64,000 bases of DNA, taken from the IMG/VR virus record IMGVR_UViG_3300042326_002445, positions 159,647 through 223,646 of that record. One strand, 5' to 3'. The notes below the pieces were generated by a model. That model worked only from the letters and a program-made list of their open reading frames with translations. It did not search any database and was not told the DNA's origin. This document shows positions 23,502 through 51,894 of the stretch, one piece after another; the first letter of the stretch is position 1; every line of letters begins with the position of its first letter. A program made the position numbers and the translations under genes.

Positions 23502-24131
23502 ATGAATGCCATAAACTTTGATAAGTCTATTATGCAGCTTGTTTCTTATCCAAGAACCGGTAGTCACTATGTTCGCATAGTAATAGAAGACATTACAAAA
23601 AGGCCTTGTGCTCCTACTTCTTTTTTGGGTTTTGATAAATTTGAACCATGGGGGTTTCACCTGCATGACAGAATTGTGGGAAATGGAGATGAGGGCATAA
23701 CTTCTGGATTTGATAAAGTAATATACTTATATAGGAATCCAGTAGATACCATTTATTCACACATAAAATATCAGAATGAGAGCGATTGGAGATCAATAGC
23801 AGAAGAGTATAAAAATCATCTCATGAGATGGCTTTACAATAATCACGATTGTAAAAAAATGATTTTTGTTAATTATGACATATTGCTAGATAAGCCGATA
23901 AAAGAATTTAAAAGAATTTTAGAATTTATGGATTTCTCAGTCAATGATGATGATTTGCAAAAATCTATAAGCAGAACAACAATATCTAGAGTTAGGGCAT
24001 TAACGGAAAAGTTAGATAATAAAGTAGTAAGTCAAGATCATTTTAATGGTCAGTACTTAATCGATAAGTCAATTTTTATTTCAGAAAATTCAGAAGAAAT
24101 AAATAAAATGTTTCAAGGCATTTATAAATAA
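23502..24131 (+). CDS. PAPS-dependent sulfotransferase
   Basis: 5'-PSB loop SYPRTGSHYVR and 3'-PB motif YRNPVDTIYS. Confidence 0.8.
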   Translation: MNAINFDKSIMQLVSYPRTGSHYVRIVIEDITKRPCAPTSFLGFDKFEPWGFHLHDRIVGNGDEGITSGFDKVIYLYRNPVDTIYSHIKYQNESDWRSIAEEYKNHLMRWLYNNHDCKKMIFVNYDILLDKPIKEFKRILEFMDFSVNDDDLQKSISRTTISRVRALTEKLDNKVVSQDHFNGQYLIDKSIFISENSEEINKMFQGIYK

Positions 24132-25097
24132 ATGAAAATATATAAAAAAATAAACTTTATTGACTACAATATATCTCATGCGGAAACATGGAAACACGCT
24201 AGTATAATGTGCGGTTGCAGAGTTCCTAAAGATTTGATGCACAATTATTATACACCTCCAAATAATATATGGTTAAAAAAATGTAATAATTTTTTTGAAG
24301 ATGAAGTAAATTCTGGAATATCTGTATTCACAGACCATGCAATTGTGGAAGTGAATAAATACAGATCGCAACATAAAGTTGCTTTAATTTTAGAACCCCC
24401 AATTGAGGCAAGGGGTATTTATGAAAAAGCCGTCAGTCTTCAGAATAAATTTGAGATTATATTTACTTTTCGAAAAAAATTAATAGAAAAAAATCCTGAA
24501 AAATTCAAATTCATGCCAGCTGATTTTGTTACATTAGAAGATGATGCGCATAAAATTCATACAAAAAATAAACTGATCTCTATGATATATTCTGGTATGA
24601 GAGGTCACAATAGAGATCTTAGGCATCAGGTTGGTAATATTTTGAGCGACAAAATTACATTATTTGGTGGAGGTAGTCCAAGCGGAGATGTGCCTTTAAA
24701 ATCTGATACTTTAAAAGACTATATGTTTTCTGTAGTAATAGAAAATTCAAAACCTTTTGACTACTATTTTACTGAAAAAATATTAGATTGTTTCATAACA
24801 GGTAATATCCCTATATATAATGGCTCTCCATCAATAGGAGATTTTTTTGACAAAAGGGGATTTCTCACATGGTCGTCTATAGACGAACTTGCAAATATTA
24901 TTGATTCTATTTCAGAAGATAAATATTATGAAATGCTGCCTTATGTAAAAATAAATTATGAATTAGCAAAAAAGTACGTTAGTGCTGATGACGTAATGAG
25001 TGATTTAATTTATGAAGCACTTCACAATAAAACGATAAATACTATGGAAAGATTTATATACAAAAATTGGAGTAATAATGAAAATAATCAATTATGA
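24132..25097 (+). CDS. GT10 (alpha-1,3/4-fucosyltransferase-like)
   Basis: YMFSVVIENS..YYFTEKILDCFITGNIPIY. Confidence 0.8.
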   Translation: MKIYKKINFIDYNISHAETWKHASIMCGCRVPKDLMHNYYTPPNNIWLKKCNNFFEDEVNSGISVFTDHAIVEVNKYRSQHKVALILEPPIEARGIYEKAVSLQNKFEIIFTFRKKLIEKNPEKFKFMPADFVTLEDDAHKIHTKNKLISMIYSGMRGHNRDLRHQVGNILSDKITLFGGGSPSGDVPLKSDTLKDYMFSVVIENSKPFDYYFTEKILDCFITGNIPIYNGSPSIGDFFDKRGFLTWSSIDELANIIDSISEDKYYEMLPYVKINYELAKKYVSADDVMSDLIYEALHNKTINTMERFIYKNWSNNENNQL

Positions 25098-25782
25098 TAC
25101 AAGCAAGTATGGATTTAGAGACTTAGTTCAATCAATATATGATGTTGATTTGTCTAATCTTGATACAGTTGATGCAAAAAAGAATTTAACTTTAGGTAAT
25201 GATACAAAAACTTCACTACATAAAGAGTTTTATAAAAAAATAGATGCTGGTTGGCCAGAATTTATGAACTTATATACTTCTTTTGTATCAGAAGTTGTGC
25301 ACCCTATGTTTGAGGATGACGTTCTTGTTTATCAAAAAACTCCAGGCATAAGGTTTTGCAGACCTGGAGCTAAGGCGGTATATAAGTGGCACTCAGATGG
25401 AGATGCTGACCATAAGCACCCTCTTGGAGAAGTGAATGTGTTTTTGCCTTTGAACAAATGCTTCGACACAAATTCTGTATGGTTTGAGACTATACCTGGC
25501 ATGGGAGATTGGCGTCCACTAGAAATGGATTATGGTCAATTGTTTATAGGTTATTGGAATCAGTGCAGGCATGGAAACAAAGAAAATTCTACGGGAAAAA
25601 CGAGAGTCAGTTTTGATTTTAGAGTTATTCCAGGTTTTGCTTACGATGAAAATTGTACATTGCAGAGTTGCACAACTAAGCAAAAATTTGTTATTGGAAG
25701 TTATTATGAAAAGATAAAAAGAGATCCGACACCATCTATGTATGACCCAGTGGAAAATGCAAAACTAGGAGCAGCATGCTAG
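25078..25782 (+). CDS. StrG-like Fe(II)/2-oxoglutarate oxygenase-fold protein
   Basis: WHSD HxD motif, HGN, TRVSFDFR. Confidence 0.65.
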   Translation: MKIINYDTSKYGFRDLVQSIYDVDLSNLDTVDAKKNLTLGNDTKTSLHKEFYKKIDAGWPEFMNLYTSFVSEVVHPMFEDDVLVYQKTPGIRFCRPGAKAVYKWHSDGDADHKHPLGEVNVFLPLNKCFDTNSVWFETIPGMGDWRPLEMDYGQLFIGYWNQCRHGNKENSTGKTRVSFDFRVIPGFAYDENCTLQSCTTKQKFVIGSYYEKIKRDPTPSMYDPVENAKLGAAC

Positions 25783-26441
25783 ACCCAAATCAGTACGAAG
25801 CCAGTCTTCTCAAGCATATGATGAATCGGTATGATTTGAATGATCCATGGGAAGTCGTTGATACTTTTGAAAATATTATTGCTAGTTACTCTGGAAGTAA
25901 ATATGCAGTATCAGTTGACAATTGTACTGATGCCATGTTTTTGTGTCTTAAGTATTTAAAGGCTGATGGAGTGATTGAAATACCCAAAAGAACATATGTA
26001 TCTGTTCCATGTACAATTATAAATGCTGGCTGCAAAGTTAAATTTATTGATATAGCGTGGAGTGGAGCCTACAAGCTTAATCCTTACAATGTTTACGATT
26101 CAGCAACAAGAATGAAAAGAAACATGTACGTAGAAGACTCTTATTATTGTTTGTCTTTTCATAGGAGAAAGCATATACCGATAGGCAAAGGCGGAATGAT
26201 ATTGACTAATAATAAAGATGCCTATGAATGGTTTAAGGTTGTCAGATACGAGGGAAGACACATGGACAGGTTATACAAAGATGATCATTTTGATCAAATT
26301 GGATGGAATATGTATATGACTCCAGAACAGGCGGCAAAGGGCATATATTTATTCGATAAACATGTAGTCGATGACAACCCAGATTTAGAAACTTCTGGTA
26401 TACATAAGGACCTATCAGAATATTCCATTTTCACAGCTTGA
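25776..26441 (+). CDS. DegT/DnrJ/EryC1/StrS-family sugar aminotransferase, short form
   Basis: AVSVDNCTDAMFLCL, LSFHRRKHIPIGKGGMILT, GWNMYM; only 221 aa. Confidence 0.75.
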   Translation: MLDPNQYEASLLKHMMNRYDLNDPWEVVDTFENIIASYSGSKYAVSVDNCTDAMFLCLKYLKADGVIEIPKRTYVSVPCTIINAGCKVKFIDIAWSGAYKLNPYNVYDSATRMKRNMYVEDSYYCLSFHRRKHIPIGKGGMILTNNKDAYEWFKVVRYEGRHMDRLYKDDHFDQIGWNMYMTPEQAAKGIYLFDKHVVDDNPDLETSGIHKDLSEYSIFTA

Positions 26442-27199
26442 GGTTTAATATGTTCTCTAAAAAAGATGTAATTAAAAAAATATTGTTGACTTGTAGTTCA
26501 GCAAAGGAAGGTCATGTTCCAAGTGCGCTTTCTATATTGGATATTTTATATGTTGTATATAGAGACTACGTATCCTTAGAAAAAGGAAGATTTGTACTAT
26601 CAAAAGGTCATGCATCAATAGGGCTTTACGCAATTCTTGATTATTTTAGCATGCTTGAGGAGCCTATTGAAAACTTTTGTAAGTTTGATTCAAAACTTGG
26701 AGGACATCCATCTTGCAGACTTAATCATGTTGAATGCTCGACTGGATCATTAGGGCATGGTATGCCATTCGCTCTTGGAATGGCAATGAGTGAGAAAATC
26801 AAAGGTTCTGATAAAAAAGTTTTTACTATTATTGGAGATGGGGAATCGAACGAAGGGACTATATGGGAAACAGCCCTTCTTGCTAGCCATCATAAAGTAA
26901 ATAATTTCTGTTGCATATTAGATCATAATCATTCTACCGACAGGGCTCTTGATATAGGCAACATGATTCAAAAATTTAAATCCTTTGGTTGGATGTGCAG
27001 TAAAGTGAACGGTCATGATTTGACAAACTTATCTAAAGTTCTTAAGAAATCAGATCCTGAAAAGCCGCACTTCATACTCGCTCATACGGTAAAAGGAAAA
27101 GGCATTAAATGCATGGAGAACAATCCAGAATGGCATCATAAGTCTCCAAGTCAAATAGATTGTGATAACATGATTAAGGAATTATATGAAAGCGTCTAA
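26438..27199 (+). CDS. transketolase, N-terminal (ThDP-binding) subunit
   Basis: GHVPSALS, LSKGHA, STGSLGHG, GDGESNEG, HTVKGKG, WHH. Confidence 0.9.
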   Translation: MRFNMFSKKDVIKKILLTCSSAKEGHVPSALSILDILYVVYRDYVSLEKGRFVLSKGHASIGLYAILDYFSMLEEPIENFCKFDSKLGGHPSCRLNHVECSTGSLGHGMPFALGMAMSEKIKGSDKKVFTIIGDGESNEGTIWETALLASHHKVNNFCCILDHNHSTDRALDIGNMIQKFKSFGWMCSKVNGHDLTNLSKVLKKSDPEKPHFILAHTVKGKGIKCMENNPEWHHKSPSQIDCDNMIKELYESV

Positions 27200-28031
27200 G
27201 AGTTTAATTATTAATACTAGAGAATATGGCATGTTTTCTAGTCTTCTGCAAATTATAGATAATTTAAAGTTTTGCGAGCTTAATAATATGAAGCCAATAT
27301 TAAATATTGGTGATAAATTTTTGTATCGCGATGGTCCAGAAAACCCTTGGAGTCATTATTTTAAGCCTATCAATGACGGAGTCGCAGAGGGAGAAGTTTA
27401 CGAAGTTTCTCAGTTAACAAAAACAGCTAACTTCTTTCTAGAAAATTATGTGATGACTCAGCCATCCATTCATGACTATAGGCTAAAATTGTGGAATATG
27501 ATTGCAGACAGAGACGATCTTCTGGCTCATCGCCAGGACATAAAAGCAATGCTTGATAAGTACGTTAAGCCATTGCCTGCAATTACAGATGAAGTAAAGA
27601 AATTTGCCAAAAAACATTTTAAGAAAGATAGTGTTCTCTCAGTTCACATCAGAAGTACGGATTATAAGTTTGTGAATCTTCCCTTGCTTATAGATAGAAT
27701 CAAAAAGATTCAGCAGCAAAACAATTACGACAAGATATTTGTAGCTTCAGATAGCTTAGAGGCTATTATGGGTATATACAACGCATTTCCTAATGTTTGT
27801 TACTATGAAACTAATTTAAGGTGCGAAAAAATTGATTCGCCCAAGCCCCTGTGCCACATTGTATTTGGTCAAGACAAAATAAGGCATGGGAGAGACGCTA
27901 TTGTAGAGTGCCTACTACTTTCTAAGGGTAAAGAAATAGTGTGTATTAATTCTAACGTTGCTGGAATGGCTTGCTATCTAAATCCAGAAATGAAAATACA
28001 TTTAATGCAAAGACAAGTGCATGGGGGATGA
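27186..28031 (+). CDS. NodZ/GT23-like O-fucosyltransferase
   Basis: GMFS, VHIRSTD, FVASDS, L.LSKG...CINSNV. Confidence 0.6.
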   Translation: MKASKSLIINTREYGMFSSLLQIIDNLKFCELNNMKPILNIGDKFLYRDGPENPWSHYFKPINDGVAEGEVYEVSQLTKTANFFLENYVMTQPSIHDYRLKLWNMIADRDDLLAHRQDIKAMLDKYVKPLPAITDEVKKFAKKHFKKDSVLSVHIRSTDYKFVNLPLLIDRIKKIQQQNNYDKIFVASDSLEAIMGIYNAFPNVCYYETNLRCEKIDSPKPLCHIVFGQDKIRHGRDAIVECLLLSKGKEIVCINSNVAGMACYLNPEMKIHLMQRQVHGG

Positions 28032-28662
28032 TAAATTGGAAATGAGTCAAATTGTAAGTATTTCAGAATCTATAAGAAAAAAATTTCCCACTAGATGGGA
28101 GTGTCAAACTCCAAGAGAATTTTTTTACATGTATCATTTAATAGATGAGTGCAACAATATTGATGGAGCTTTTGCAGAAATAGGTGCTTATCAGGGTTTT
28201 ACAAGTGAATTTATTTTCTTAATTAAGAAAAAAGAAAAACGTTTTTTTGTCTGTGATACGTTTACTGGCTTGCGAGACGTTGGAGAGCATGACCGTTATT
28301 TAGATATACCTAATGGTGGTTTAAGTGTTGGAGTTGAAGAATTCTGCAACATGAATGATTTTGTCAAAGAAGAATCAGTTGCATTAATAAATGGATATTT
28401 TCCAGATTCTGCAACAAGTGAAATGAATAATTCTACTTATTCATTTGTTCATATTGATACTGATACTCATGACTCTACAAAAAATAGTTTACATTATTTT
28501 TATCCAAAAATGGCTCACGGTGGAAAAATTTTAGTTCACGATTATAGAAATCATCAAGGAACAAAAGGTGTTGCAAAAGCGGTTGATGATTTTATGATTG
28601 ATAAAGAAGATTCGCTTATGACACACGAAGACAGTACTCAAGCAATTATAACGAAAATATAA
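28021..28662 (+). CDS. TylF/MycF-type sugar O-methyltransferase
   Basis: GAFAEIGAYQG, CDTFTG, GYFPDS, VHIDTD, GGKILVHDY, GVAKAVDDF. Confidence 0.85.
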   Translation: MGDDKLEMSQIVSISESIRKKFPTRWECQTPREFFYMYHLIDECNNIDGAFAEIGAYQGFTSEFIFLIKKKEKRFFVCDTFTGLRDVGEHDRYLDIPNGGLSVGVEEFCNMNDFVKEESVALINGYFPDSATSEMNNSTYSFVHIDTDTHDSTKNSLHYFYPKMAHGGKILVHDYRNHQGTKGVAKAVDDFMIDKEDSLMTHEDSTQAIITKI

Positions 28663-28663
28663 A

Positions 28664-29539
28664 ATGAGAAAACAATTTGTAAAATCAATGAAAGAAATAC
28701 TGTACGGAGATATTGATTCCGTACTGTTACTGGGAGACATTGGAGTCTTTGGTTTTAGAGAAGAATTAAAAAATCTATCCAATAGAGCATACAACATCGG
28801 GATACTGGAGCAAGCGACTATCAGCTTAGCTGCAGGCATGGCTCGTGGCGGCTTGATCCCTTTTGTCCACACCATAGCTCCCTTTATGGTTGAACGCGCA
28901 TTGGAGCAAATAAAGGTCGATTTTGGATATCAAGAATTAAACGGTAATTTCATAAGTGTTGGAGCATCCTATGACTATGCCGGATTGGGCTGCACTCATC
29001 ATTGTCCTGGAGACATTCAGGGGCTCATGAGTATCCCAAATATAAATATATTTACACCGGGTTCTTCTAAGGAATTTGATAATCTATTAAAATTTTATTA
29101 TAAAAATAATGGACCAAAATATTTCAGATTGAGTGAATACGAAAACAATCTTTCTTTTGAATGCGAACCGGGAAGGGCATGCATAGTAAAAGAAGGCAGT
29201 CTCGCAACTATTGTTTGCTATGGACCAATATGCGATTCTGTTATGAGTGCATGTGATAATTTGGATGTTTGCATTTTGTATTACAACTCTATTTTGCCAT
29301 TTGATTCAGAAACTTTGAGTAATAGTTTTAATGAAAAAATTATAATATGTGAGCCTTTTTATGCTGGTACAACAAATTATTTAATTACGAATGCTCTACA
29401 AGGCAAAAAATATAGCCTATTCAATATAGGCGTCCCAAGAAGATTTCTTCATAATTATGGCGATAAAAAACAACACGATCAACATTTGTCTTTAGATGTT
29501 GAGGGTATAAGAAAAAGGATCAAAGAATGCTTAGTTTGA
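28664..29539 (+). CDS. transketolase, C-terminal subunit
   Basis: NIGILEQATISLAAGMA, RALEQIKVD, GCTHH, GPKYFRL. Confidence 0.9.
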   Translation: MRKQFVKSMKEILYGDIDSVLLLGDIGVFGFREELKNLSNRAYNIGILEQATISLAAGMARGGLIPFVHTIAPFMVERALEQIKVDFGYQELNGNFISVGASYDYAGLGCTHHCPGDIQGLMSIPNINIFTPGSSKEFDNLLKFYYKNNGPKYFRLSEYENNLSFECEPGRACIVKEGSLATIVCYGPICDSVMSACDNLDVCILYYNSILPFDSETLSNSFNEKIIICEPFYAGTTNYLITNALQGKKYSLFNIGVPRRFLHNYGDKKQHDQHLSLDVEGIRKRIKECLV

Positions 29540-30558
29540 TAAAAGAAGAATGCAAAGATATTGTAAACAAAATTGATTTTTCTTCCTTAAAAGGAAAAAG
29601 AGTTCTTATCACTGGAGCATCTGGAATAGTTGGTGTCTACATGGTTGCATGTCTTAAGAATATTAGTAGGCAATATAATATAGATATTTTTTGCTGGATA
29701 AATAATGATGTAGACCCGGTGTTCGAAGATCTGTATGATGGGTGTGCGATTATAAAGGGTGATATATGCGATGATGGGCTGCTAGATTCAGTCTATAAAG
29801 ATTTGTGTGAAACTCTAAGTGGATTTGATCTTATAATACATGCTGCAGGGTATGCTCAACCCAATAAGTTTTTAGAAAATAAGATTAAAACTATACAGCT
29901 CAATACCACATCAACAGCAAAGCTATTCAAAATGTTGAATAAAGACGGTACTTTTGTATTTATGAGTACCAGTGAACTCTATAGTGGCATAGATCATGAT
30001 AACATATCTGAGGACGATATAGGAACATCGTCTACTAATCATCCTAGATCTTGTTATATTGAAGGAAAAAGATGTGGAGAAGCTATTTGCCATGCTTACT
30101 CGAAGGATCACAATATAAAAATTATGAGGCTTAGTTTAGCTTACGGTCCAGGCACAAAGCATAATGATCAAAGAGTGTTGAACTCATTATTTCAAAAAGC
30201 TTTTCAGACAGGTAAAATAAATCTATTAGATAGTGGGTCTTCAACCAGAACATACGGCTATATTTCAGACATCACTGAAATGATGTGGAACGTAATTTTG
30301 TTTGGTAAAGAATCAGTATATAATATGGCTGGAGACTCTAAGACTAGCATACGCGAATTGGCTGAAATAATAGGGAGTCTTACAGGCGTCCCAGTTACAA
30401 TACCTTCAAGTGACGACAATCAACTTTTAGGCACACCAAAAAATGTAAACTTAAGTTTAAATAGATATTTTAATGAATTTAATCACATCAATTTTGTACC
30501 CCTCCATGAAGGCTTAAGAAGAACAATGGAGTGGCAGAAAGGTCTATATGTCAAATAA
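29527..30558 (+). CDS. NAD-dependent nucleotide-sugar epimerase/dehydratase (SDR)
   Basis: ITGASGIVG, STSELY, CYIEGKR YxxxK. Confidence 0.85.
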   Translation: MLSLIKEECKDIVNKIDFSSLKGKRVLITGASGIVGVYMVACLKNISRQYNIDIFCWINNDVDPVFEDLYDGCAIIKGDICDDGLLDSVYKDLCETLSGFDLIIHAAGYAQPNKFLENKIKTIQLNTTSTAKLFKMLNKDGTFVFMSTSELYSGIDHDNISEDDIGTSSTNHPRSCYIEGKRCGEAICHAYSKDHNIKIMRLSLAYGPGTKHNDQRVLNSLFQKAFQTGKINLLDSGSSTRTYGYISDITEMMWNVILFGKESVYNMAGDSKTSIRELAEIIGSLTGVPVTIPSSDDNQLLGTPKNVNLSLNRYFNEFNHINFVPLHEGLRRTMEWQKGLYVK

Positions 30559-31465
30559 AATAAGCCCAGATCATTTTTCCAATATATTAGGTTTTAGCAT
30601 TGACACTACAGTTGCTAAAAAAATAGAGCAATTTGATCTTCAATATCAGGATCTGACAGAGCAAGAGATGAACGACTACCTAATTAGGGTCGTAGATGTA
30701 TTGACGGGAGATATCGTAAAAAGTGGAGCTCATAGAATAGATGATTGGGAAAAAGGCTGGGGTGAAAACTTAGATCTTTATAGGCAAACAAAAGATATAA
30801 ACTCTCTTGTGCCAAAATATCATTGTAAAAATAGATATGTAAGATGGATGGGAAAGATAGTCAATCCAATCACTCCAGCTTTCGATTATAAAATACATAT
30901 ATGCTTTATTGATGCAATCTTGCATCATTATTTAAAAGATGGATATACAAGTGTGTATGAATTTGGATGTGGTCCCGGATATCATCTTTTAAGGCTTCGT
31001 AATGATAGGCCAGATTTAGACCTTACTGGACTTGATTGGGCAAAGTCTTCACAAGACCTTATACGGGAAATCAGTACCTCTTTATCAAAGCCAATTAATG
31101 CACACAATCTGGATTTCTTTAAACCAGATTACAATTTTGATATTAATGAAAACAGTATCGCATACACTGTAGCTGCATTAGAACAAACGGGTAGCAACTA
31201 CATTAAATTCGTTGACTATTTACTTGATAAGAAGCCAGCTTTGTGTATAAATATGGAACCAATAGCTGAGCTTTTAGATGAAACTAAATTAATTGACAAT
31301 CTTTCTATAAAGTATTTTAGAAAAAGAAATTATTTACATGAATATTTAACTCATCTAGAATGGCTTGAGTCAATTGGTAAAATCAAAATAATTGATAAGA
31401 GAAGAATATATAGCGGTAGCTATTTTATTGAGGGTCATTCTCTAGTAGTTTGGAAACCAATTTAA
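30548..31465 (+). CDS. class I SAM methyltransferase
   Basis: YEFGCGPG, LTGLDW, YTVAALEQ. Confidence 0.75.
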   Translation: MSNKISPDHFSNILGFSIDTTVAKKIEQFDLQYQDLTEQEMNDYLIRVVDVLTGDIVKSGAHRIDDWEKGWGENLDLYRQTKDINSLVPKYHCKNRYVRWMGKIVNPITPAFDYKIHICFIDAILHHYLKDGYTSVYEFGCGPGYHLLRLRNDRPDLDLTGLDWAKSSQDLIREISTSLSKPINAHNLDFFKPDYNFDINENSIAYTVAALEQTGSNYIKFVDYLLDKKPALCINMEPIAELLDETKLIDNLSIKYFRKRNYLHEYLTHLEWLESIGKIKIIDKRRIYSGSYFIEGHSLVVWKPI

Positions 31466-32358
31466 CTCATAATATCTTGCATGATAATTTTGATTGGATT
31501 GTAAGAGTTAAGATAAAGATCTTTAGCATGATTAATGCTGTAGTCTTCTAAGCGTTTTTGGCTATTTATTATATCTTTTATCCTATCTATCTCTCTTCCA
31601 TCATATTCAATATATTCAAATGCATTAGGATAAAATTTTTCTATATCTCTATGCCCATTGTATATTGGTATTGTATTGCATAATATTGCATCTATAAATT
31701 TTTCACTTATGTTCCCACTTACGCAAGAGTTTTCAAGACATATGGAATATTTATATTCAGATAATCCTGAAATCTTATTCATCAAAGGTCCCCTGTATCG
31801 TTTATCGCTCAGGTTCCATCCTCTTCCATACATGTCAAATTCTATATCAGAATTTAAAAGTTTCGTTACTAGCTCTCTTCTTTTATTGTAATTTGTATAT
31901 GACCTATTGTCTACAGGCGCATTTGAAACAATAATGGAGAGTGTTTTTGTTTTATTAAATTGTGATGTTAATATTTTTTTAGTAGTTTCTGATGAAGGCT
32001 GAATTTCTCCACTGCCATCTGGATTTGCATCATAAAGTCTGTGAGTTCCAAGAAGAGGCGACCATATTGTTCTTCCGTTTTCGTATTTATTTGTTTCATA
32101 TGTAACAATCTTTTTGCAATAAGAAAGCATGTTTTTATCAAAATTTTCAGACCAATAAGGCTCTATTACAATTCCATAAGTTTTATCTTTTTCAATTCTG
32201 TATGATGGATTGTGCACATAGTTCATTATTACTAAATGAGTATAGTCGTCTTGATGAGTTAAAACATCGCTGTAGCTACCATCGTGGTTCCATATATCGT
32301 TGATAAAACGATATATGTTATAGTCACTATTCCAGTAGCCAGCAAATTTTATTTTCAT
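31462..32358 (-). CDS. GT10 fucosyltransferase-like
   Basis: YKYSICLENS..SGNISEKFIDAILCNTIPIY. Confidence 0.75.
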   Translation of the reverse strand: MKIKFAGYWNSDYNIYRFINDIWNHDGSYSDVLTHQDDYTHLVIMNYVHNPSYRIEKDKTYGIVIEPYWSENFDKNMLSYCKKIVTYETNKYENGRTIWSPLLGTHRLYDANPDGSGEIQPSSETTKKILTSQFNKTKTLSIIVSNAPVDNRSYTNYNKRRELVTKLLNSDIEFDMYGRGWNLSDKRYRGPLMNKISGLSEYKYSICLENSCVSGNISEKFIDAILCNTIPIYNGHRDIEKFYPNAFEYIEYDGREIDRIKDIINSQKRLEDYSINHAKDLYLNSYNPIKIIMQDIMS

Positions 32359-32990
32359 TCTTTTCCTTGTATCTCACTAACATATGTTCCGTTTTGCGAT
32401 CCTTGTGTCATTATTCCAGGCTCATACCAATACACAATAGTATTAAGTTTTATAAATCTATAATTTAAATCAAAATCTATTGGCAAGTGAGCTTTTCCAT
32501 TTTTCATGTCTTCATATACTTTTTGTGCAGCTTTTGGATGGACTATCATGCTATCTGTGCATTTTGTCTTCCACCTATTTGGACATTTTACAAAACCTTC
32601 GCCTTCTGTGCGTATCCCACATCCAGTACCAAAAAAACAAAATTCCCAGTCTTCTGGTATATTATTAAAATTATATACAAAATTATCTAATGTTTCTGGG
32701 TTAAATATTACGTCATCTTCTAGTATCATTGAAGCCTGTCCGCTGTCTGCAATCTTTTTAAATGTTCTAAATTGCTTATGTATGAGAGACTTATTTCCTT
32801 TGTTTATCTCTACAGCAGGAAAGTCTTCTGGAAGTATTGCTCTTTTTTCAGGTATGCTTGAAAATTCTATTTCACTGCTTTCTGACGTTACTACTTCCAA
32901 ATCTTCTAAAAACTTACATTGCATTAACAAGCCTGTGACTTTTAAGAATCTTTCAGTAAAACCTTTTTTGTGCATTAAAAAAACTTTCAT
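32355..32990 (-). CDS. GT25-like glycosyltransferase
   Basis: SLIHKQ, MILEDD, LPIDFDL, QGS. Confidence 0.65.
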   Translation of the reverse strand: MKVFLMHKKGFTERFLKVTGLLMQCKFLEDLEVVTSESSEIEFSSIPEKRAILPEDFPAVEINKGNKSLIHKQFRTFKKIADSGQASMILEDDVIFNPETLDNFVYNFNNIPEDWEFCFFGTGCGIRTEGEGFVKCPNRWKTKCTDSMIVHPKAAQKVYEDMKNGKAHLPIDFDLNYRFIKLNTIVYWYEPGIMTQGSQNGTYVSEIQGKE

Positions 32991-33111: not shown

Positions 33112-33945
33112 ATGCTTTTATCAATATTGGTTCCAGGCAAAAATGACAACTTTAGATACAATGGTTCAAAAACCATTGAATTTAATATTAATCAAACTTT
33201 AGATAATATAGAATATTCTGGGTTTAAAGATGTAGAACTCGTATTGTGCGATTGGGGTAGTGAGAAGAAAATAGTAGATGAAATAGTTAAAAGAAAACAT
33301 AAGAATTTTAAATGTGTTTATGTTCCCCCAGATATAGCACAAAAATATAATGGTCAGGCAAATTATTCTATAGTGCATCCAATTAACACTGCATTTAGGC
33401 ATAGCTCTGGTAAATATGTATGCTTCTGGGATTCTGATTGCTTTGTGCTTCAAGATAGCTTTGTAAAGCTTTATGAGTTTGTTCTTCAAATGGAAGCTAC
33501 TCAAGACATGCAATTTTATTGGGGTTCTAGATATCATATACCGTATGAATCCTATAATGATTTAAGAAGTCATAAAGAATTAGTTGCAAAAATAAATAAT
33601 GGTATGCAAGTTATGCATGATAAAATAGCTGGAGGAGGTAAATTTATGGGAGCCTCTATATCATTGTTAATGAACAGAATTTTATGGGAGGATAGTACTG
33701 GATGGTATGAAAATCTTCCGTATTGGGGATGGCAGGATATTGAGTTCCACCATCGCTTGATGAAGAGATACAGCTATGGCGGCGATCTGGAAGATTGGGG
33801 CATGAGTTTTTTTCACATGCTTCAGCCTGCCAGTAAAGACGGCACAAAAAATAAGCACTTGATGAATCCCTCAATAAACGCAACATTCTTTAAAGCTAAT
33901 CCTCCAAGTTGGGGTTTAGCAAATGAGAAATTGGAAATAATGTAA
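33112..33945 (+). CDS. GT2-like glycosyltransferase, tandem copy 1
   Basis: LCDWGS, WDSD DxD, WGWQDIEF. Confidence 0.7.
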   Translation: MLLSILVPGKNDNFRYNGSKTIEFNINQTLDNIEYSGFKDVELVLCDWGSEKKIVDEIVKRKHKNFKCVYVPPDIAQKYNGQANYSIVHPINTAFRHSSGKYVCFWDSDCFVLQDSFVKLYEFVLQMEATQDMQFYWGSRYHIPYESYNDLRSHKELVAKINNGMQVMHDKIAGGGKFMGASISLLMNRILWEDSTGWYENLPYWGWQDIEFHHRLMKRYSYGGDLEDWGMSFFHMLQPASKDGTKNKHLMNPSINATFFKANPPSWGLANEKLEIM

Positions 33946-34297
33946 TGATATTATCCATATTAATCCCTGGTAAAAATGATGATTTTCGATGCAATGGTAC
34001 AAAAACAATAGAATTTAATTTGAATCAAGTTTTGGATAATCTTGAATTTTTTAACTTTCCAGATTTAGAGTTAGTGCTTTGTGATTGGGGAAGTAAAAAG
34101 AAAATAGTAGGATCAATATTGGAAAGAAAACACAAAAACTTTAAATGCGTTTATGTCAGACCAAGCGTTGCTAAAAAATATAATGGTAAGGCGAATTATT
34201 CTATAGTACATCCAATTAATACTGCATTTAGGCATAGCTCTGGTAAATATGTATGCTTCTGGGATTCTGATTGCTTTGTGCTTCAAGATAGCTTTGT
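33388..34297 (+). repeat. 77-nt perfect direct repeat (33388-33464 and 34221-34297) between the tandem GT paralogs
   Basis: actgcatttagg...gatagctttgt is identical in both copies, 833 nt apart; a second identical tract of about 38 nt lies at the 3' ends. Confidence 0.9.
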
Positions 34298-34784
34298 CAA
34301 GCTATACGAGTTTGTTCATCAAATGAATATAAATTCTGATAAAAAATTTTACTGGGGATCTAGATGGCATATATCTTATGATGAATATACGTATCTATCT
34401 TCTCACAAAGATTTATTAGAAAAAATAAACAATGGTCTTCAGCCATCAAGAAAAGACTCATTTGACTATGGTCAAAATTTTATGGGTGGTTCTATATCGC
34501 TCTTGATGGACAGGTCAATATGGGAAGAAAGTACAGGTTGGTATGAGAAATTGCCCTATTGGGGATGGCAGGACATTGAGTTTCACAGAAGATTGTTGAC
34601 CAAATATGTTCAGGGTGAAGATCTTGTTTCGCATGGAATGGTATTTTATCATTTAAATCAACCAGAAAAAATGGATAAATTACAAAATAAACACAAATTT
34701 AATGAGCAAATAAATGCAAAATCTTTTAAAGCTAATCCTCCAAGTTGGGGTTTAGCAAATGAAAAATTGGAGATAATAGAATGA
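33945..34784 (+). CDS. GT2-like glycosyltransferase, tandem copy 2
   Basis: Same motifs; clear paralog of 33112..33945. Confidence 0.7.
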   Translation: MILSILIPGKNDDFRCNGTKTIEFNLNQVLDNLEFFNFPDLELVLCDWGSKKKIVGSILERKHKNFKCVYVRPSVAKKYNGKANYSIVHPINTAFRHSSGKYVCFWDSDCFVLQDSFVKLYEFVHQMNINSDKKFYWGSRWHISYDEYTYLSSHKDLLEKINNGLQPSRKDSFDYGQNFMGGSISLLMDRSIWEESTGWYEKLPYWGWQDIEFHRRLLTKYVQGEDLVSHGMVFYHLNQPEKMDKLQNKHKFNEQINAKSFKANPPSWGLANEKLEIIE

Positions 34785-38076: not shown

Positions 38077-38093
38077 TTTAAGGTAATTATTTT

Positions 38094-40760: not shown

Positions 40761-41371
40761 TTTAAAAAGTCATATTTTCTATGACCGCCCTCTATGTCTG
40801 AGTAGCCTTCTCTTTGCCAAGCAAGATGGTGACAAAATCCATAGCATGATATTCTTTTTTGTATTTTGTGCAAATGTACATCCGCTGGTAGGTTAAAGAT
40901 ATTGCTATCAGAAAATTGTTCCATTAAAACATTAACTGCATTTTGATTTATTGCATAGCAATGAGTGGTGAATGTCTTCCTAAGTTTGTGTACGTACTCA
41001 TTTATCTTTTTAGGCGGCTCATTGTGAGACCCCCCAAAGAAAAGTAAATTCCAATCTTCTGGCACATGTTTGTAGTATTGTGAAAAAAGATTTTTAAAGT
41101 TTGGATGAAATTCAATATCATCTTCAAGAACTAGTACTTTTTGCAAACTTTTATCATCAAACATTTTTTGATATATTTTTTTATGAGAAAGGCAGCAGCC
41201 TGCAGCTCCTTTCTTGAGCCCCTTAGTATCGGATATGGTATCGCCATCAATAGCTTCTATAAATTCAACGTTCAGTCCGTGTGTGCGGAATATTCTTTCG
41301 CATTCTGAACGACGATCTTTTCTTCTTTGCAAATTAATGCAGTATATTTTATTAAAATCTGATATGTGCAT
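40757..41371 (-). CDS. GT25 glycosyltransferase, paralog of 19398..20015
   Basis: DFNKIYCINLQRR, GAAGCCLSH, LEDD, TTHCYAI shared. Confidence 0.85.
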   Translation of the reverse strand: MHISDFNKIYCINLQRRKDRRSECERIFRTHGLNVEFIEAIDGDTISDTKGLKKGAAGCCLSHKKIYQKMFDDKSLQKVLVLEDDIEFHPNFKNLFSQYYKHVPEDWNLLFFGGSHNEPPKKINEYVHKLRKTFTTHCYAINQNAVNVLMEQFSDSNIFNLPADVHLHKIQKRISCYGFCHHLAWQREGYSDIEGGHRKYDFLK

Positions 41372-41374
41372 ATT

Positions 41375-42295
41375 TTATATTTTATGAGATTCTGCTGCTA
41401 TCCTATTGAGTACGGATTGTTTTTGTAACTGTAAAAAGTCTTCAAACATTCTTACCAGCTTTAACTTTTCCTCATTATTTAAATGAATAAAATATTTTTG
41501 TATTTTTAAACCTTTATTCCTTACTGGTAGCGGAGTCACTTTTTCATTACTTGGATGCCATAAATGGAACATTTCTATACGTGGATTGTCACATCCTACA
41601 AACTTTTTAAATAATTCAATTTTATCCACAAAGAACTGATCTTCTATTGAGTATGCCCAGAAGTAATATGGATCAAATCCACCAACTTTATTAAATAGCT
41701 CTCTTTTAATAACTATAGATCCTCCTGGAGCTCCTGGCCTTCCAGTATGAAAAGAGTTAGGTCTTACAATTGCTTGTTCTACACTTATATGATTAGAAAA
41801 TATCTCATTTGAGATCTGTTCATTTAAATAATTTACTCTTCTACCAGCAAATGACTGGACTATATCTTTTCCATTTAAGTTATCTCTTAACTGCTTCCAG
41901 AAATGCTTTGGCATCCATAGGTCAACGTCATGAAAATGTATGTATTTTGAATCATGTAAAAAACTTCCAATATTCATTGATAAGCATTTATTGAACAAGT
42001 CTTTGTTTTTGTTCATGAAAATATAGTCTATGTCATGTTGTATGCACATGTCTATTGCTTCTGGATTATTTGAGTGTTCAACAACAACCATTCTATGAGA
42101 ATTTTCACTCTCTTGTCTACATTCATTAAAGCATTTTATAAATTGAGCAAGATGCTTGTTTCTTCCACATACGGGAACAACTGTAAGAAAATCGTAGTAA
42201 GATCTTGGAACAGACCTATATCTTGCGTTTTCTAAACGTTCAATAATATTGCTTTTATTGCCAATAAAATTGTCTAATAAAAACTGCATGTTCAT
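41375..42295 (-). CDS. GT2/GT7-like glycosyltransferase
   Basis: HDVD DxD, GGFDP...IED, FHLWH. Confidence 0.7.
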   Translation of the reverse strand: MNMQFLLDNFIGNKSNIIERLENARYRSVPRSYYDFLTVVPVCGRNKHLAQFIKCFNECRQESENSHRMVVVEHSNNPEAIDMCIQHDIDYIFMNKNKDLFNKCLSMNIGSFLHDSKYIHFHDVDLWMPKHFWKQLRDNLNGKDIVQSFAGRRVNYLNEQISNEIFSNHISVEQAIVRPNSFHTGRPGAPGGSIVIKRELFNKVGGFDPYYFWAYSIEDQFFVDKIELFKKFVGCDNPRIEMFHLWHPSNEKVTPLPVRNKGLKIQKYFIHLNNEEKLKLVRMFEDFLQLQKQSVLNRIAAESHKI

Positions 42296-42418: not shown

Positions 42419-43231
42419 TTAGACGTATCGTCTGTCTGGATTCTTCTTCATGATCTCTTTGCCCATTTTGACGAGAGCGTTTTTGCTTCTCATCGCATGC
42501 ACGATAGCTGGATCAACAACCGACTCCTTATGAGTCATGTATTCAACAAATTTCCAAGGCATACCTTCAGGTATGTTGTCTTTTAATGCTCCAGTCCATT
42601 CACTTGCCCATATGTCCATGTAGTTTTTATGCATTCTTTTTTCGTAATCAAGACTGAACATATGAGACAATACCCCTATAGGGACCTCCTCTGGTAAATT
42701 AAGTCCTAATTTTGCTTGATATTGTCTGAAATTATTCACTACATATTTTGCGTGTTTGGCGAACTCTTTTTTACAAATCCAGAAACCACCATTTGTGTTG
42801 TACACCACTTTTTGAGACACTCCAAACTGTCTCCAAAGGTTGACCATATTTTCATTCTTCACGCTCCACCAGTCAGACCTTAGTGTTGTTGGGTCATTGA
42901 GCGGACTTTCCAGAAAGCTGTGCCAAACATCATTACCTATAATTTCTGAAAAATCTAGGATTGGTTTTCTGACAAAATAATGATCACTATCTATAAATAC
43001 TAGCAGATCGTAATCCATTTCTGCGACCTTGACAAGATACTCAAATTTCCAATATTGAGTTTGATCCATTTGTATCTCTTTTATCATAGCTCTTGTTTTG
43101 CAGCCATGAAGAGGCTCATCGCAGTAAACCACAATGTCATGTTCAATGCCGCAGTTCCTCATGCTTTGCACAAGAGATTGTAGCATATACCTATATTCAC
43201 CCCAAGCAACAGACCAAATCAATGTTTTCAT
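42419..43231 (-). CDS. GT-A nucleotide-diphospho-sugar transferase-like
   Basis: FIDSDH DxD, NGGFWI, PEE; paralog of 6915..7808. Confidence 0.65.
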   Translation of the reverse strand: MKTLIWSVAWGEYRYMLQSLVQSMRNCGIEHDIVVYCDEPLHGCKTRAMIKEIQMDQTQYWKFEYLVKVAEMDYDLLVFIDSDHYFVRKPILDFSEIIGNDVWHSFLESPLNDPTTLRSDWWSVKNENMVNLWRQFGVSQKVVYNTNGGFWICKKEFAKHAKYVVNNFRQYQAKLGLNLPEEVPIGVLSHMFSLDYEKRMHKNYMDIWASEWTGALKDNIPEGMPWKFVEYMTHKESVVDPAIVHAMRSKNALVKMGKEIMKKNPDRRYV

Positions 43232-44283
43232 GATTTTACCTCTATGTTTTGACCAGCAAGGTTTAAAAGATTATCCCATTTAGCAATATATTTATTCTTG
43301 TCACACCATATATCTTTGGCGTACTCACTAGCCTTTTTGCCCATAGTCTTTCTAGTATGCGTGTCACACATATGCCTTGCTGCGTCCTTAGCCTGATCAA
43401 GATTGTCCCATAAGAATCCGCATTCATTTTCTATGATCATGTTTGGAAAGTTCCATTTGCGTGGAGCTATTACTGGTGCTCCAGTAAGCTGGCTTTCCAT
43501 AATTGCCCTACTTTGATTTTCTACAAATTTAAAATTGCAGTTGTACAGAAATACGTCAAGGTCTACGAACCACTCATGAGTTGGCATAGCGTTAGTTGCG
43601 TACAGTCTCCATTTATCATTGAATTCATACCAGCTGTAAATGGAAGATAATGAGTCAGACCATCCTAGTATTGAATACTCACAGTTTAGCCCTTCGCAAA
43701 CTTGGTCATAAAAAATAGGAAAGTTATCGCCAAATTTCATTACGTCATCTCTGGAAACTTTTCCAAACACTGTTTTATTTCTTAAGGGTCTGTCTATATA
43801 CTTCCACATATCAGCTTCAAAGTAATTTTCTAATACAAATGTTTTTTGAAGACGATTTTGATTTGCTACTTCTTTATGCATCACAGACCTATGAAAGGGT
43901 GATGTGTATAGTACAACGTCTACTTGATTTTTCTTTATGGCGCTCAATTCCTCTGGAGTATGCCACATCATATCATTAGACCACATGAATTTTAGACCAG
44001 ATTCTTTTATGAAATTTATTCTTTGAAAATCAGCAAAAACACGGAAATTGCAATTGGAGTAGGCAAAACCTGTTAATTTTTTTGGCAAGCTTGACATCAT
44101 GCAATATTTTATGCCAAGTTTATCTAAAAAGTCTGTATTATGCTTTTCTCTCAGTCTAAATTCATCATTGGGAATACATGTAATATTATGAGTATCTTTT
44201 AATAAAACGAGCAATTCTTTCAGTCTTGTGTCTGCTCCACCAAGATCTGATATCCATTGAAATACATATAGGTTTTCTTTCAT
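43228..44283 (-). CDS. GT4 (GT-B) glycosyltransferase
   Basis: LGGADTRL, ENQSRAIMESQLTGAPVIAP, ENECGFL. Confidence 0.75.
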   Translation of the reverse strand: MKENLYVFQWISDLGGADTRLKELLVLLKDTHNITCIPNDEFRLREKHNTDFLDKLGIKYCMMSSLPKKLTGFAYSNCNFRVFADFQRINFIKESGLKFMWSNDMMWHTPEELSAIKKNQVDVVLYTSPFHRSVMHKEVANQNRLQKTFVLENYFEADMWKYIDRPLRNKTVFGKVSRDDVMKFGDNFPIFYDQVCEGLNCEYSILGWSDSLSSIYSWYEFNDKWRLYATNAMPTHEWFVDLDVFLYNCNFKFVENQSRAIMESQLTGAPVIAPRKWNFPNMIIENECGFLWDNLDQAKDAARHMCDTHTRKTMGKKASEYAKDIWCDKNKYIAKWDNLLNLAGQNIEVKS

Positions 44284-46382: not shown

Positions 46383-46386
46383 ATAA

Positions 46387-46476: not shown

Positions 46477-46502
46477 ATGAATTTTATATCGGCACTGGAT
46501 CT

Positions 46503-49115: not shown

Positions 49116-49121
49116 GCGTTA

Positions 49122-50526: not shown

Positions 50527-50534
50527 CATCCAAG

Positions 50535-50882
50535 ATGGAGAAAAAAATAATGTCAGAAAATATTGTAAAACTTGATACTGATAATTTTGACAAAGAAATT
50601 TATCAGAGTGATACTCCTTGTTTTGTTCAGTTCAGCACGCCGTGGTGTGCTCCGTGCAGAACCTTTGCGCCTATCATGGCTTCTTTATCTGAGCAGTTTA
50701 ATGGCAAGTGCAAATTTGGAAAAATCGATGCAGAAGAAAATATGGAACTAGCATATAAGTTTAATATTTCTTCTGTTCCAACTATGCTAATATTTAAAAA
50801 AGATCAAGTGGTTGAGCGAATAAATGGACTGGTTCCTAGAGATAATCTAGTATCAAAAATAGAAAACGTTTTACAATCATAA
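50535..50882 (+). CDS. trxA: thioredoxin
   Basis: FSTPWCAPCR active site; SVPT cis-Pro loop. Confidence 0.9.
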   Translation: MEKKIMSENIVKLDTDNFDKEIYQSDTPCFVQFSTPWCAPCRTFAPIMASLSEQFNGKCKFGKIDAEENMELAYKFNISSVPTMLIFKKDQVVERINGLVPRDNLVSKIENVLQS

Positions 50883-50898
50883 GTAAGATTGGATAAAA

Positions 50899-51894
50899 AT
50901 GCAAAAAACAGCGATTATCACAGGCGTCAATGGTCAGGATGGATCTTACCTTTCAGAGCTACTGCTATCGAAAGGTTACAGAGTAATAGGGCTGAAGAGA
51001 AGAACTTCAACTATTAATACATCTAGAGTAGATCATTTGATGTCTCACCCAGATTTTATATTGCGTTATTATGACTTGCAAGATGGACCATGCATAACTC
51101 ACCTTCTTGGCTCATGTCATGTTGATGAACTTTACAATCTGGCTGCACAGTCTCATGTGGGGGTGTCTTTTGAAATTCCAGAATACACATCATACGGGAT
51201 ATGCCAAGGAACCTTAAAGATACTTGAGGCAATACGCGCATCAAGTCCTCATACAAAGTTCTACCAAGCATCTTCTTCTGAAATGTTTGGAGACAGTACT
51301 GATTATGATGACAATCAGGCTTTTAATGAGAATAGTAAAATGTTACCTGTATCCCCATATGCATGCTCAAAGCTGCATGCGCATCACATGACTCGTGTTT
51401 ACAGAAATGCATACGGTATGCATGCGTCTTCCGGCATACTGTTTAATCATGAAAGCCCTCGTCGTGGTGAAACTTTTGTAACACGCAAAATCACAATTGC
51501 TGCTGCAAAGATTAAGCTTGGCATGCAAAGAAAGTTGAGTCTAGGCAATCTTGATGCTAAAAGAGATTGGGGTCATGCAGCAGATTATGTTGAAGCCATG
51601 TGGCTTATGCTTCAGCACGATTTTGGCGATGACTACGTGATCGCTACGAATGAAACTTACACTGTACGTGACTTCTTGAAGGTAGTTTTTGATCACGCTG
51701 GACTAGGAAGCTATGAGCAATATGTAGTAATAGACCAAAGACTTTTCCGTCCAAATGAAGTTCCTTTCTTAAAAGGAAATCCCGCAAAGGCAAAGTCAGT
51801 TTTGGGATGGAAGCCGAAGTACAACATGGAATCGCTAGCAATCAGCATGTTTGATGAAGACATGAAAAATTTAACAGAAAAGGTTTTAAGATGA
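50899..51894 (+). CDS. gmd: GDP-mannose 4,6-dehydratase
   Basis: ITGVNGQDGSYL, YNLAAQSHV, YQASSSEMFG, SPYACSK, NHESPRRGETFVTRKI, LGNLDAKRDWGHA. Confidence 0.95.
   Translation: MQKTAIITGVNGQDGSYLSELLLSKGYRVIGLKRRTSTINTSRVDHLMSHPDFILRYYDLQDGPCITHLLGSCHVDELYNLAAQSHVGVSFEIPEYTSYGICQGTLKILEAIRASSPHTKFYQASSSEMFGDSTDYDDNQAFNENSKMLPVSPYACSKLHAHHMTRVYRNAYGMHASSGILFNHESPRRGETFVTRKITIAAAKIKLGMQRKLSLGNLDAKRDWGHAADYVEAMWLMLQHDFGDDYVIATNETYTVRDFLKVVFDHAGLGSYEQYVVIDQRLFRPNEVPFLKGNPAKAKSVLGWKPKYNMESLAISMFDEDMKNLTEKVLR

What the first reader, a model, noticed from the sequence alone, without database searches (positions are those of the whole stretch)
23502..51894. Complete GDP-L-fucose route plus six fucosyltransferase-like genes, O-methylases and a sulfotransferase
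Seen: gmd (50899) and fcl (35524), GT10 x3, GT11 x2, NodZ-like x1, TylF/FkbM methyltransferases and a sulfotransferase. Known: Gmd and Fcl convert GDP-mannose to GDP-L-fucose. Inference: the product is a multiply fucosylated, methylated and possibly sulfated glycan, which would be unusual for a virus. gmd sits outside the island, about 14.5 kb from fcl, suggesting separate acquisition or regulation.
Basis: partly seen in the sequence, partly recalled or inferred. Interest (0 to 1): 0.62.

Follow-up and report, generated by a model that had tools for sequence, protein, structure and literature searches.

The report
Phage fucose, methyl and sulfate glycan island
An uncultured freshwater megaphage carries a roughly 33 kb sugar-building island that can make GDP-fucose and encodes six fucosyltransferase-like enzymes, many methyltransferases and a sulfotransferase. 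The sulfotransferase-fucosyltransferase core of the island is a module shared by unrelated aquatic phages.

Summary
They are conserved in sibling assemblies and under purifying selection. GT11b and the NodZ-like gene miss Pfam thresholds and rest on structure and motifs.

The window is the last 64 kb of a 224 kb IMG/VR phage contig (about 55% complete; a sibling contig is from a freshwater lake virome).

The island is larger than reported (11453-44283). It also holds GT2, GT25 and GT4-like genes, a split transketolase cassette, a GalE-like epimerase, a mini-DegT and a 2OG-oxygenase-like gene, so the product is a heteroglycan.

"Separate acquisition" of gmd is not supported. gmd and fcl are adjacent in most viral loci, and both genes of this phage group with the same viral lineage. 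The split looks secondary and is shared with a sibling.

"Unusual for a virus" is only partly right. GT10-like genes occur at 421 or more IMG/VR sites, often with GT11, gmd and fcl. Chloroviruses and cyanophage S-SCSM1 are precedents.

The new point is a conserved module (MT-like, sulfotransferase, GT10, MT fold, oxygenase-like, mini-DegT) that recurs in distant marine and freshwater phage contigs. The acceptor is unknown.

The parts
11453..16447 (+). Left arm of the island: GT2 (11453-12256), a three-domain GT2 / methyltransferase-like / GT1-4 protein (12217-14613), and two paralogous GT2-like ORFs (14610-15551, 15548-16447)
   Evidence: Pfam; paralogy
19398..20045 (-). GT25 glycosyltransferase, 52% identical to 40757-41371
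20026..22303 (+). Three conserved ORFs with no family assignment (20026-20793, 20794-21561, 21554-22303)
   Evidence: No Pfam hit; homologs in L004, L250 and L254
22279..22926 (+). Module gene A: unknown, methyltransferase-like motifs. It lies just upstream of the sulfotransferase in distant contigs
   Evidence: weak methyltransferase hits only
22919..23500 (+). Module gene D: class I SAM-methyltransferase fold, 62-73% identical in distant phage contigs
   Evidence: model pLDDT 70, all top hits are methyltransferases
23502..24131 (+). Compact (209 aa) PAPS-type sulfotransferase
   Evidence: PF00685 41.3 bits; PAPS motifs aligned to 5x2b; family of 36 environmental clusters
24132..25097 (+). 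GT10a fucosyltransferase-like gene, starting right after the sulfotransferase
25078..25782 (+). Module gene E: Fe(II)/2OG-oxygenase-like, with invariant HxD...H and RxS
   Evidence: Alignment; no Pfam or PDB sequence hit, so assigned by motif only
25776..26441 (+). Module gene F: mini-DegT (221 aa). It keeps the SFH..K lysine motif but lacks about 50 core residues and the C-terminal domain
   Evidence: 49-75% identical in distant contigs; dN/dS 0.05
26438..31465 (+). Split-transketolase cassette: TK-N 26438-27199, NodZ/FUT8-like GT 27186-28031, TylF O-methyltransferase 28021-28662, TK-C 28664-29539, SDR 29527-30558, methyltransferase-like 30548-31465
   Evidence: co-conserved in L004, L006 and L082-85
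31462..32990 (-). GT10b (31462-32358) and a weak GT25-like ORF (32355-32990)
33112..34784 (+). Tandem GT2 duplicates, 70% identical; single copy in siblings L082-84
34781..35527 (+). GT11b-like gene with a degenerate motif I (HVRLGD)
   Evidence: absent in L082-84
35524..36429 (+). Fcl, GDP-L-fucose synthase
36434..37375 (+). GalE-like sugar-nucleotide 4-epimerase
37378..39202 (+). Three FkbM-type methyltransferase ORFs (37378-38076 weak, 38094-38705, 38675-39202 partial domain)
39199..42295 (-). GT11a (39199-39978), GT10c (39975-40760), GT25 (40757-41371), GT2 (41375-42295)
42419..44283 (-). Two conserved ORFs; 43228-44283 is weakly GT1/4-like
50899..51894 (+). Gmd, GDP-mannose 4,6-dehydratase, 14.5 kb downstream of fcl

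Best explanation
This is an auxiliary glycan-biosynthesis island of a large uncultured freshwater phage. Inferred from family membership and catalytic residues: Gmd and Fcl convert host GDP-mannose to GDP-L-fucose. Up to six soluble GT-B fucosyltransferase-family enzymes (three GT10, two GT11-like, one GT23-like) and at least ten other glycosyltransferases (GT2, GT25, GT4-like) then build a fucose-rich heteroglycan in the cytoplasm. Inferred from family and gene order: SAM-dependent methyltransferases (TylF, FkbM and two new methyltransferase-like genes) O-methylate the glycan, and a compact PAPS-dependent sulfotransferase sulfates it. That sulfotransferase is genetically coupled to GT10a. GDP-mannose, PAPS and SAM come from the host. 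The island has no initiating, flipping, polymerising or exporting protein, so it must act either on host lipid-linked envelope glycans exported by host machinery (my first choice, about 45%) or directly on phage proteins (about 35%). The separation of gmd from fcl is a secondary rearrangement of an ancestral adjacent pair.
For: Gmd and Fcl identity and catalytic residues. The short N-terminal helix of Fcl is a clade trait, not decay. GT10 motifs and alignment to H. pylori FucT. GT11. GT23-like fold. Sulfotransferase PAPS motifs. A FucT-like gene is adjacent to, or one gene from, the sulfotransferase in 9 of 10 sampled contexts; one of these carries a CysN-like gene and Wzm/Wzt, that is, a cellular O-polysaccharide-type cluster. 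Module genes are shared at 44-75% identity with a T4-like contig and Tara scaffolds. No transmembrane segment in any island ORF, and no polytopic membrane protein, Bac_transf or NTP_transferase on the 224 kb contig. Purifying selection. Congruent gmd and fcl trees and prevailing adjacency.
Against: No biochemical data exist. Donor specificity cannot be read from sequence. Fcl and Gmd fall below NCBIfam equivalog cut-offs (Gmd by 0.8 bits). GT11b and the GT23-like gene miss Pfam thresholds. The contig is only about 55% complete, so export or initiation genes and ManC could lie on the missing half. The cassette with mini-DegT, oxygenase-like gene and split transketolase implies other, unidentified sugars that some FucT-like enzymes might use. 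The acceptor is a guess: one cellular context favours envelope glycans, while virus precedents favour virions.
Confidence: 0.6

Rival explanations
1. The glycan is built directly on virion proteins (capsid, tail or fibre), giving the phage a methylated, sulfated, fucose-rich coat, as in chloroviruses, mimivirus fibrils and mycobacteriophages.
For: All enzymes are soluble, with no lipid-carrier initiation or export genes on the contig. The set is large and self-contained, with 17 or more GTs plus sugar-nucleotide enzymes. A three-domain GT/MT/GT protein recalls PBCV-1 A064R. Virion glycosylation is known in phages (cited in PMC12619734). Giant RCC1, dockerin and pectate-lyase-like proteins on the contig could be targets.
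Against: No target or glycosylation motif was identified. The sulfotransferase-GT10 pair also sits in a Wzm/Wzt cluster. GT25, GT10 and GT11 are typical LPS/O-antigen families.
Confidence: 0.35
2. Some or all FucT-like enzymes transfer another GDP-6-deoxyhexose made from the Gmd product or by the mini-DegT / oxygenase / transketolase cassette, so the glycan is less fucose-rich than the gene names suggest.
For: Mini-DegT lies next to Fcl-like or Gmd genes in L249 and L253. The GT23-like gene is embedded between the two transketolase halves. Perosamine synthases are among the mini-DegT's solved matches.
Against: Fcl keeps the full Ser/Cys/Tyr/Lys/His set, and its best solved match is the human enzyme at 216 bits. 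From memory of CAZy, characterised GT10 members are fucosyltransferases. Mini-DegT lacks much of the fold.
Confidence: 0.2
3. The glycosyltransferases hypermodify phage DNA bases with glycans.
For: Phage GTs that decorate DNA are known (cited).
Against: No thymidylate-synthase-like hydroxymethylase on the contig. The GT families here (GT10, GT11, GT23, GT25) and the sulfotransferase are glycan or protein-glycan families.
Confidence: 0.03
4. The island is bacterial DNA mis-assembled into a viral contig.
For: Its gene content resembles bacterial O-antigen loci.
Against: The same island with the same flanks occurs in several independent assemblies, up to 406 kb. Phage replication genes lie on the same contig. 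Fcl sits in a virus-only clade, and the nearest cellular Fcl is 44% identical or less.
Confidence: 0.02

Closest known systems
Chlorovirus PBCV-1 glycan machinery (GMD A118R, GMER A295L, A064R, A111/114R)
   Same: A virus-encoded GDP-L-fucose route, soluble glycosyltransferases including a fucosyltransferase domain, a multidomain GT + methyltransferase protein, and methylated 6-deoxy sugars (PMC7019647).
   Different: The host is eukaryotic and the capsid target is proven. PBCV-1 has no sulfotransferase and far fewer FucT-like genes. The genes are scattered rather than in a 33 kb island.
Cell-wall gene cluster of T4-like cyanophage S-SCSM1
   Same: A phage with gmd, fcl and three annotated fucosyltransferases (O-FucT, alpha-1,2-FucT, NodZ) plus five GTs (PMC9602691).
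   Different: Annotation only. No sulfotransferase, TylF/FkbM set or split transketolase is reported. It is a different phage lineage (T4-like, against a phage with a split PHROG-405 polymerase).
Rhizobial Nod-factor fucose decoration (NoeL/NolK, NodZ, NoeI, NoeE); recalled from memory, not tested here
   Same: The same logic: Gmd + Fcl, an alpha-1,6-fucosyltransferase, a fucose 2-O-methyltransferase and a PAPS-dependent fucose sulfotransferase.
   Different: The acceptor is a lipo-chitooligosaccharide with a single fucose. No homology to NoeE or NoeI was tested.
Bacterial ABC-transporter-dependent O-polysaccharide clusters
   Same: L251 carries homologs of module gene A, the sulfotransferase and GT10 beside Wzm, Wzt and a CysN-like gene.
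   Different: The phage island lacks transporter, initiating transferase and PAPS synthesis genes.

Membership tests
GDP-mannose 4,6-dehydratase (Gmd, TIGR01472) | Full-length match at the equivalog cut-off | tested here: inconclusive
   414.2 bits against a cut-off of 415; PF16363 388.7 bits
GDP-mannose 4,6-dehydratase (Gmd, TIGR01472) | Glycine-rich NADP site, S/T-x-E and YxxxK catalytic residues | tested here: met
   Alignment to 1n7g, 349 bits
GDP-L-fucose synthase (Fcl/GMER, NF047922) | Equivalog score | tested here: not met
   209 bits against a cut-off of 500. The helix after GxxGxxG is shortened, a trait shared by the viral clade
GDP-L-fucose synthase (Fcl/GMER, NF047922) | Ser-x-Cys, YxxxK and His catalytic set; nearest characterised proteins are Fcl | tested here: met
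   Alignment to human 4e5y; the first 18 solved matches are all GDP-L-fucose synthases
GT10 alpha-1,3/4-fucosyltransferase | Pfam PF00852 over cut-off, and the ENS..(Y/I)(T/S)EK nucleotide-binding motif | tested here: met
   26.9, 40.5 and 41.4 bits against 23.9; motif in all three; aligned to 2nzw
GT10 alpha-1,3/4-fucosyltransferase | Uses GDP-L-fucose as donor | not testable with these tools
   Needs an enzyme assay
GT11 alpha-1,2-fucosyltransferase | Pfam PF01531 over cut-off, and motif I HxRRxD | tested here: met
   39199-39978: 79.6 bits, HIRRTDY
GT11 alpha-1,2-fucosyltransferase | The same features for the second copy, 34781-35527 | tested here: inconclusive
   No Pfam hit; Atlas features 0.98 and structure TM 0.78 to GT11 clusters; motif HVRLGD
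GT23 (NodZ/FUT8) fucosyltransferase | Pfam PF05830 or PF19745 over cut-off | tested here: not met
   11.7 bits against 28.3; homologs at 42-45% identity do carry these families
GT23 (NodZ/FUT8) fucosyltransferase | GT-B FucT-superfamily fold with an HxRxxD donor motif | tested here: met
   Top Foldseek hits are FUT8 and NodZ (E 6e-11), then POFUT2, AtFUT1 and POFUT1; invariant H154, R156 and D159
PAPS-dependent sulfotransferase (PF00685) | Pfam over cut-off, and 5'-PSB and 3'-PB PAPS-binding motifs | tested here: met
   41.3 bits against 22; YPRTGSH and YRNPVD aligned to 5x2b
Sugar O-methyltransferases (TylF PF05711, FkbM PF05050) | Pfam over cut-off | tested here: met
   TylF 51.4 against 23; FkbM 33.6 and 31.9 against 22.7; 37378-38076 is below cut-off at 18.9
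Self-sufficient O-antigen or capsule locus | Initiating phosphoglycosyltransferase, and flippase/polymerase or ABC exporter | tested here: not met
   No transmembrane proteins in the island, none polytopic on the contig, no Bac_transf. The contig is only about 55% complete
Virion glycosylation system (chlorovirus or mycobacteriophage type) | Glycan attached to structural proteins | not testable with these tools
   Needs purified virions

The most novel reading that the evidence does not exclude
A mobile six-gene sulfo-fucosylation module (methyltransferase-like A, compact sulfotransferase, GT10, methyltransferase D, 2OG-oxygenase-like E, mini-DegT F) circulates among unrelated aquatic phages. 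In this megaphage it caps a fucose-rich glycan that coats the virion itself, giving a phage-made, fucoidan-like sulfated glycocalyx.
Probability: 0.2. Interest if true: 0.8.

Novelty: new variant of a known kind. Interest (0 to 1): 0.55.

Why it matters
Virus-encoded GDP-fucose synthesis and fucosyltransferases are known, but sulfation of a phage-made glycan is not described in the papers I could search. The island offers three things. It is one of the densest FucT sets seen in a virus: other viral GT10 loci hold 1-4 FucT-like genes within about 16 kb. It defines a conserved sulfotransferase-GT10 module that links marine T4-like phages and a freshwater megaphage and can be expressed and assayed directly. 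It also contains compact, strongly conserved enzymes of unknown chemistry (the mini-DegT, a 2OG-oxygenase-like protein and a split transketolase with variable inserts). Sulfated, methylated fucosides on cells or virions would affect phage adsorption, superinfection, grazing and carbon or sulfur flux in lakes and oceans.

Tried and rejected
- Separate acquisition of gmd is rejected. The gmd and fcl trees are congruent for this lineage, and the split is shared with the L004 contig.
- Fcl as a decayed gene because of its short N-terminus is rejected. The deletion is shared by a broad clade, catalytic residues are intact, and dN/dS is 0.19.
- A bacterial origin traceable to a host gave nothing. 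The nearest cellular Fcl sequences are 44% identical or less and scattered over many phyla.
- megablast against cultured phages hit only a tRNA.
- One viral scan with the sulfotransferase alignment used poor N-terminal patterns and found only the phage's own lineage. It was replaced by the protein search.
- Profile search of the oxygenase-like gene against solved structures gave nothing; the assignment rests on motifs only.
- Pfam on three giant ORFs gave RCC1, dockerin and pectate-lyase-like domains but no glycosylation target.
- My iterated local 'gmd' HMM drifted onto other SDRs; the counts were redone by best BLAST hit.
- The moraphage paper describes PolB phages. No link to this lineage was shown.


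Full report
**Context.** The window is bases 159647-223646 of a single 223,646 bp IMG/VR virus record. The record is linear, with a CheckV completeness of about 55% and 34.7% G+C. The rest of the contig encodes phage-type replication proteins: a DNA polymerase split into two ORFs, a DnaB-like helicase, a UvsX-like recombinase and an exonuclease. It also encodes giant ORFs of up to 5,596 aa, some with RCC1, dockerin and pectate-lyase-like domains. Near-identical and sibling contigs occur in several metagenomes. One protein cluster sits on a 406 kb contig. A sibling contig comes from run ERR2814753, which is listed in the Lake Soyang freshwater virome paper (PMC7553992). This is therefore a large uncultured freshwater phage, not a cellular genome.

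**Observation.**
- Gmd (50899-51894) is unambiguous. It scores 414 bits on TIGR01472 and 349 bits against Arabidopsis MUR1, and its catalytic residues are kept.
- Fcl (35524-36429) scores below the NCBIfam equivalog cut-off. Its first 18 solved matches are all GDP-L-fucose synthases, led by the human enzyme at 216 bits, and the Ser-x-Cys, YxxxK and His residues align.
- The short helix after the glycine-rich loop of Fcl is shared by a whole clade of viral Fcl proteins, so it is not decay.
- The three GT10 proteins pass the Pfam cut-off and keep the donor-binding ENS...EK core. One aligns to H. pylori FucT over that region.
- GT11a (39199-39978) is clear.
- GT11b (34781-35527) has no Pfam hit. 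It matches GT11 clusters by language-model features and by structure (TM 0.78).
- The NodZ-like protein (27186-28031) reaches only E 0.11 in Pfam. A confident AF2 model (pLDDT 89.9) finds FUT8 and NodZ first, then POFUT2, AtFUT1 and POFUT1. Homologs at 42-45% identity carry the NodZ or FUT8 Pfam families.
- The sulfotransferase keeps both PAPS-binding motifs.
- All island genes compared with siblings show dN/dS of about 0.22 or less, with synonymous sites saturated.

**What else is there.**
- Glyco-genes run from 11453 to 44283, further left than the finding's start. They include GT2 genes, a three-domain GT2 / methyltransferase-like / GT1 protein, three GT25-type genes and a tandem GT2 duplication.
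- A second pathway cassette is co-conserved in L004, L006 and L082-85. It consists of mini-DegT, transketolase N-half, GT23-like, TylF, transketolase C-half, an SDR and a methyltransferase-like gene.
- A GalE-like epimerase follows fcl.
- No island ORF has a predicted transmembrane segment.
- The contig has no polytopic membrane protein, Bac_transf, NTP_transferase (ManC), APS kinase or thymidylate-synthase-like gene. The island therefore depends on host GDP-mannose, PAPS, SAM and, if it acts on envelope glycans, on host initiation and export. The missing 45% of the genome limits this negative evidence.

**gmd versus fcl.**
- Among viral loci that hold both genes, 27 of 38 have them adjacent. 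Most of the others are about 1.1 kb apart or less, and the widest gap is 3.8 kb.
- In maximum-likelihood trees the window's Gmd groups with L008-L010 (support 99).
- Its Fcl lies in a virus-only clade with L004, L006, L007 and L008-L010 (support 99-100, also when 67 cellular sequences are added). In L006 and L008-L010 the two genes overlap or abut.
- The L004 contig (Fcl 92% identical, Gmd 75%) has gmd about 12.9 kb downstream of fcl in the same orientation.
- The simplest history is an ancestral fcl-gmd pair that was later split by inserted cassettes, a purA-like gene and a tRNA cluster. Independent acquisition is not needed. Separate regulation was not tested.

**How unusual.**
- Among 77 loci outside this lineage, a GT11 gene lies within 8 kb in 44, gmd in 23, fcl in 22 and both in 15.
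- FucT-like genes per locus range from 1 to 4.
- Chlorovirus PBCV-1 (PMC7019647) and cyanophage S-SCSM1 (PMC9602691) are published precedents.
- What stands out in this island is the number of FucT-like genes (six) and the sulfotransferase.

**The new point.** The 209 aa sulfotransferase belongs to a family of 36 unnamed environmental clusters. I sampled ten distant contexts, at 29-60% identity.
- A GT10 gene follows the sulfotransferase directly in seven.
- A GT11 gene follows it directly in one.
- A GT10 gene lies two genes upstream in one.
- One short contig is uninformative.

BLAST shows a shared set of genes:
- A (22279-22926)
- the sulfotransferase
- GT10a
- D (22919-23500)
- E (25078-25782)
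- F (the mini-DegT)

These often sit with Fcl, Gmd, GT11 and FkbM genes. D, E and F are 44-75% identical between this phage and Tara or T4-like contigs. L250 carries a T4 clamp-loader gene and RegA, and L253 carries PhoH. That is higher than the identity for Fcl and Gmd (43-51%).
- D models as a class I SAM methyltransferase (pLDDT 70).
- E has invariant HxD...H and RxS motifs typical of Fe/2OG oxygenases. This rests on motifs only.
- A has weak methyltransferase signals.
- One context (L251) is a cluster with a CysN-like gene and Wzm/Wzt. That ties the sulfotransferase-GT10 pair to PAPS use and to O-polysaccharide export in cells.

**Mechanism and limits.** The pathway-level reading is well supported by family membership and gene linkage: GDP-fucose synthesis, multiple fucosylation, O-methylation and sulfation of a heteroglycan built by soluble enzymes. 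It has not been tested biochemically. The acceptor is open. I lean slightly towards host envelope glycans because of L251 and the LPS-type GT families. Virion proteins are a close second, given the self-contained soluble machinery and the viral precedents. Some FucT-like enzymes may use other GDP-sugars. DNA glycosylation and mis-assembly are unlikely.

Noticed in passing
window 25776-26441: A 221 aa 'mini-DegT'. It keeps the SFH..K lysine motif but lacks about 50 core residues and the whole C-terminal domain. It is nevertheless 49-75% identical across unrelated phage contigs, with dN/dS of 0.05. Its chemistry is unknown.
   Followed up: partly
window 26438-27199 and 28664-29539: A transketolase split into N and C halves. 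The genes inserted between the halves vary: GT23-like + TylF here, FkbM alone or TylF + FkbM in siblings. This suggests a ThDP-dependent two-carbon transfer on a sugar, but the product is unidentified.
   Followed up: partly
window 44993-46003 (-) and 3569-4741 (+): A short (336 aa) adenylosuccinate-synthase-like gene: PurA models score 293 bits, below cut-off, and PurZ only 99 bits. There is also an IMPDH/GMP-reductase-family gene. These may be auxiliary purine metabolism genes. The purA-like gene has no homolog in the fetched part of the L004 contig.
   Followed up: no
window 46386-46477 (-): In a four-tRNA cluster (Tyr, Thr, Asn, Ser), the type II Ser-like tRNA has the anticodon ACU, with an unusual A at position 34. 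It was called by ARAGORN and matches Rfam tRNA at 53.6 bits.
   Followed up: partly
window 35524-36429 against L004: fcl is the most conserved island gene between the window and L004 (92% aa identity, dS 0.30), while its neighbours are 55-88% identical with saturated dS. This suggests a recent recombination patch.
   Followed up: no
window 33112-34784: Tandem GT2 duplicates, 70% identical. Siblings L082-84 have a single copy and lack GT11b, so the island changes by duplication and cassette gain or loss.
   Followed up: partly
G000:C1:371-84881 and 127234-152899 (outside the window): Runs of giant ORFs (1,200-5,596 aa), some with RCC1-like propellers, dockerin-like and pectate-lyase-like domains. 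They may be fibre or host-recognition proteins.
   Followed up: partly
window 51891-52298: A 135 aa ORF that overlaps the gmd stop codon and has no family hit. ORFs of 136-137 aa sit beside Fcl or GT11 genes in L249 and L250, but homology was not shown.
   Followed up: no
window 55195-55758; 61071-61901; 63661-63999: A SpoU-family RNA methylase and HEAT / LRV-repeat ORFs lie downstream of gmd. G+C rises from about 33% in the island to about 47% at the window end.
   Followed up: no
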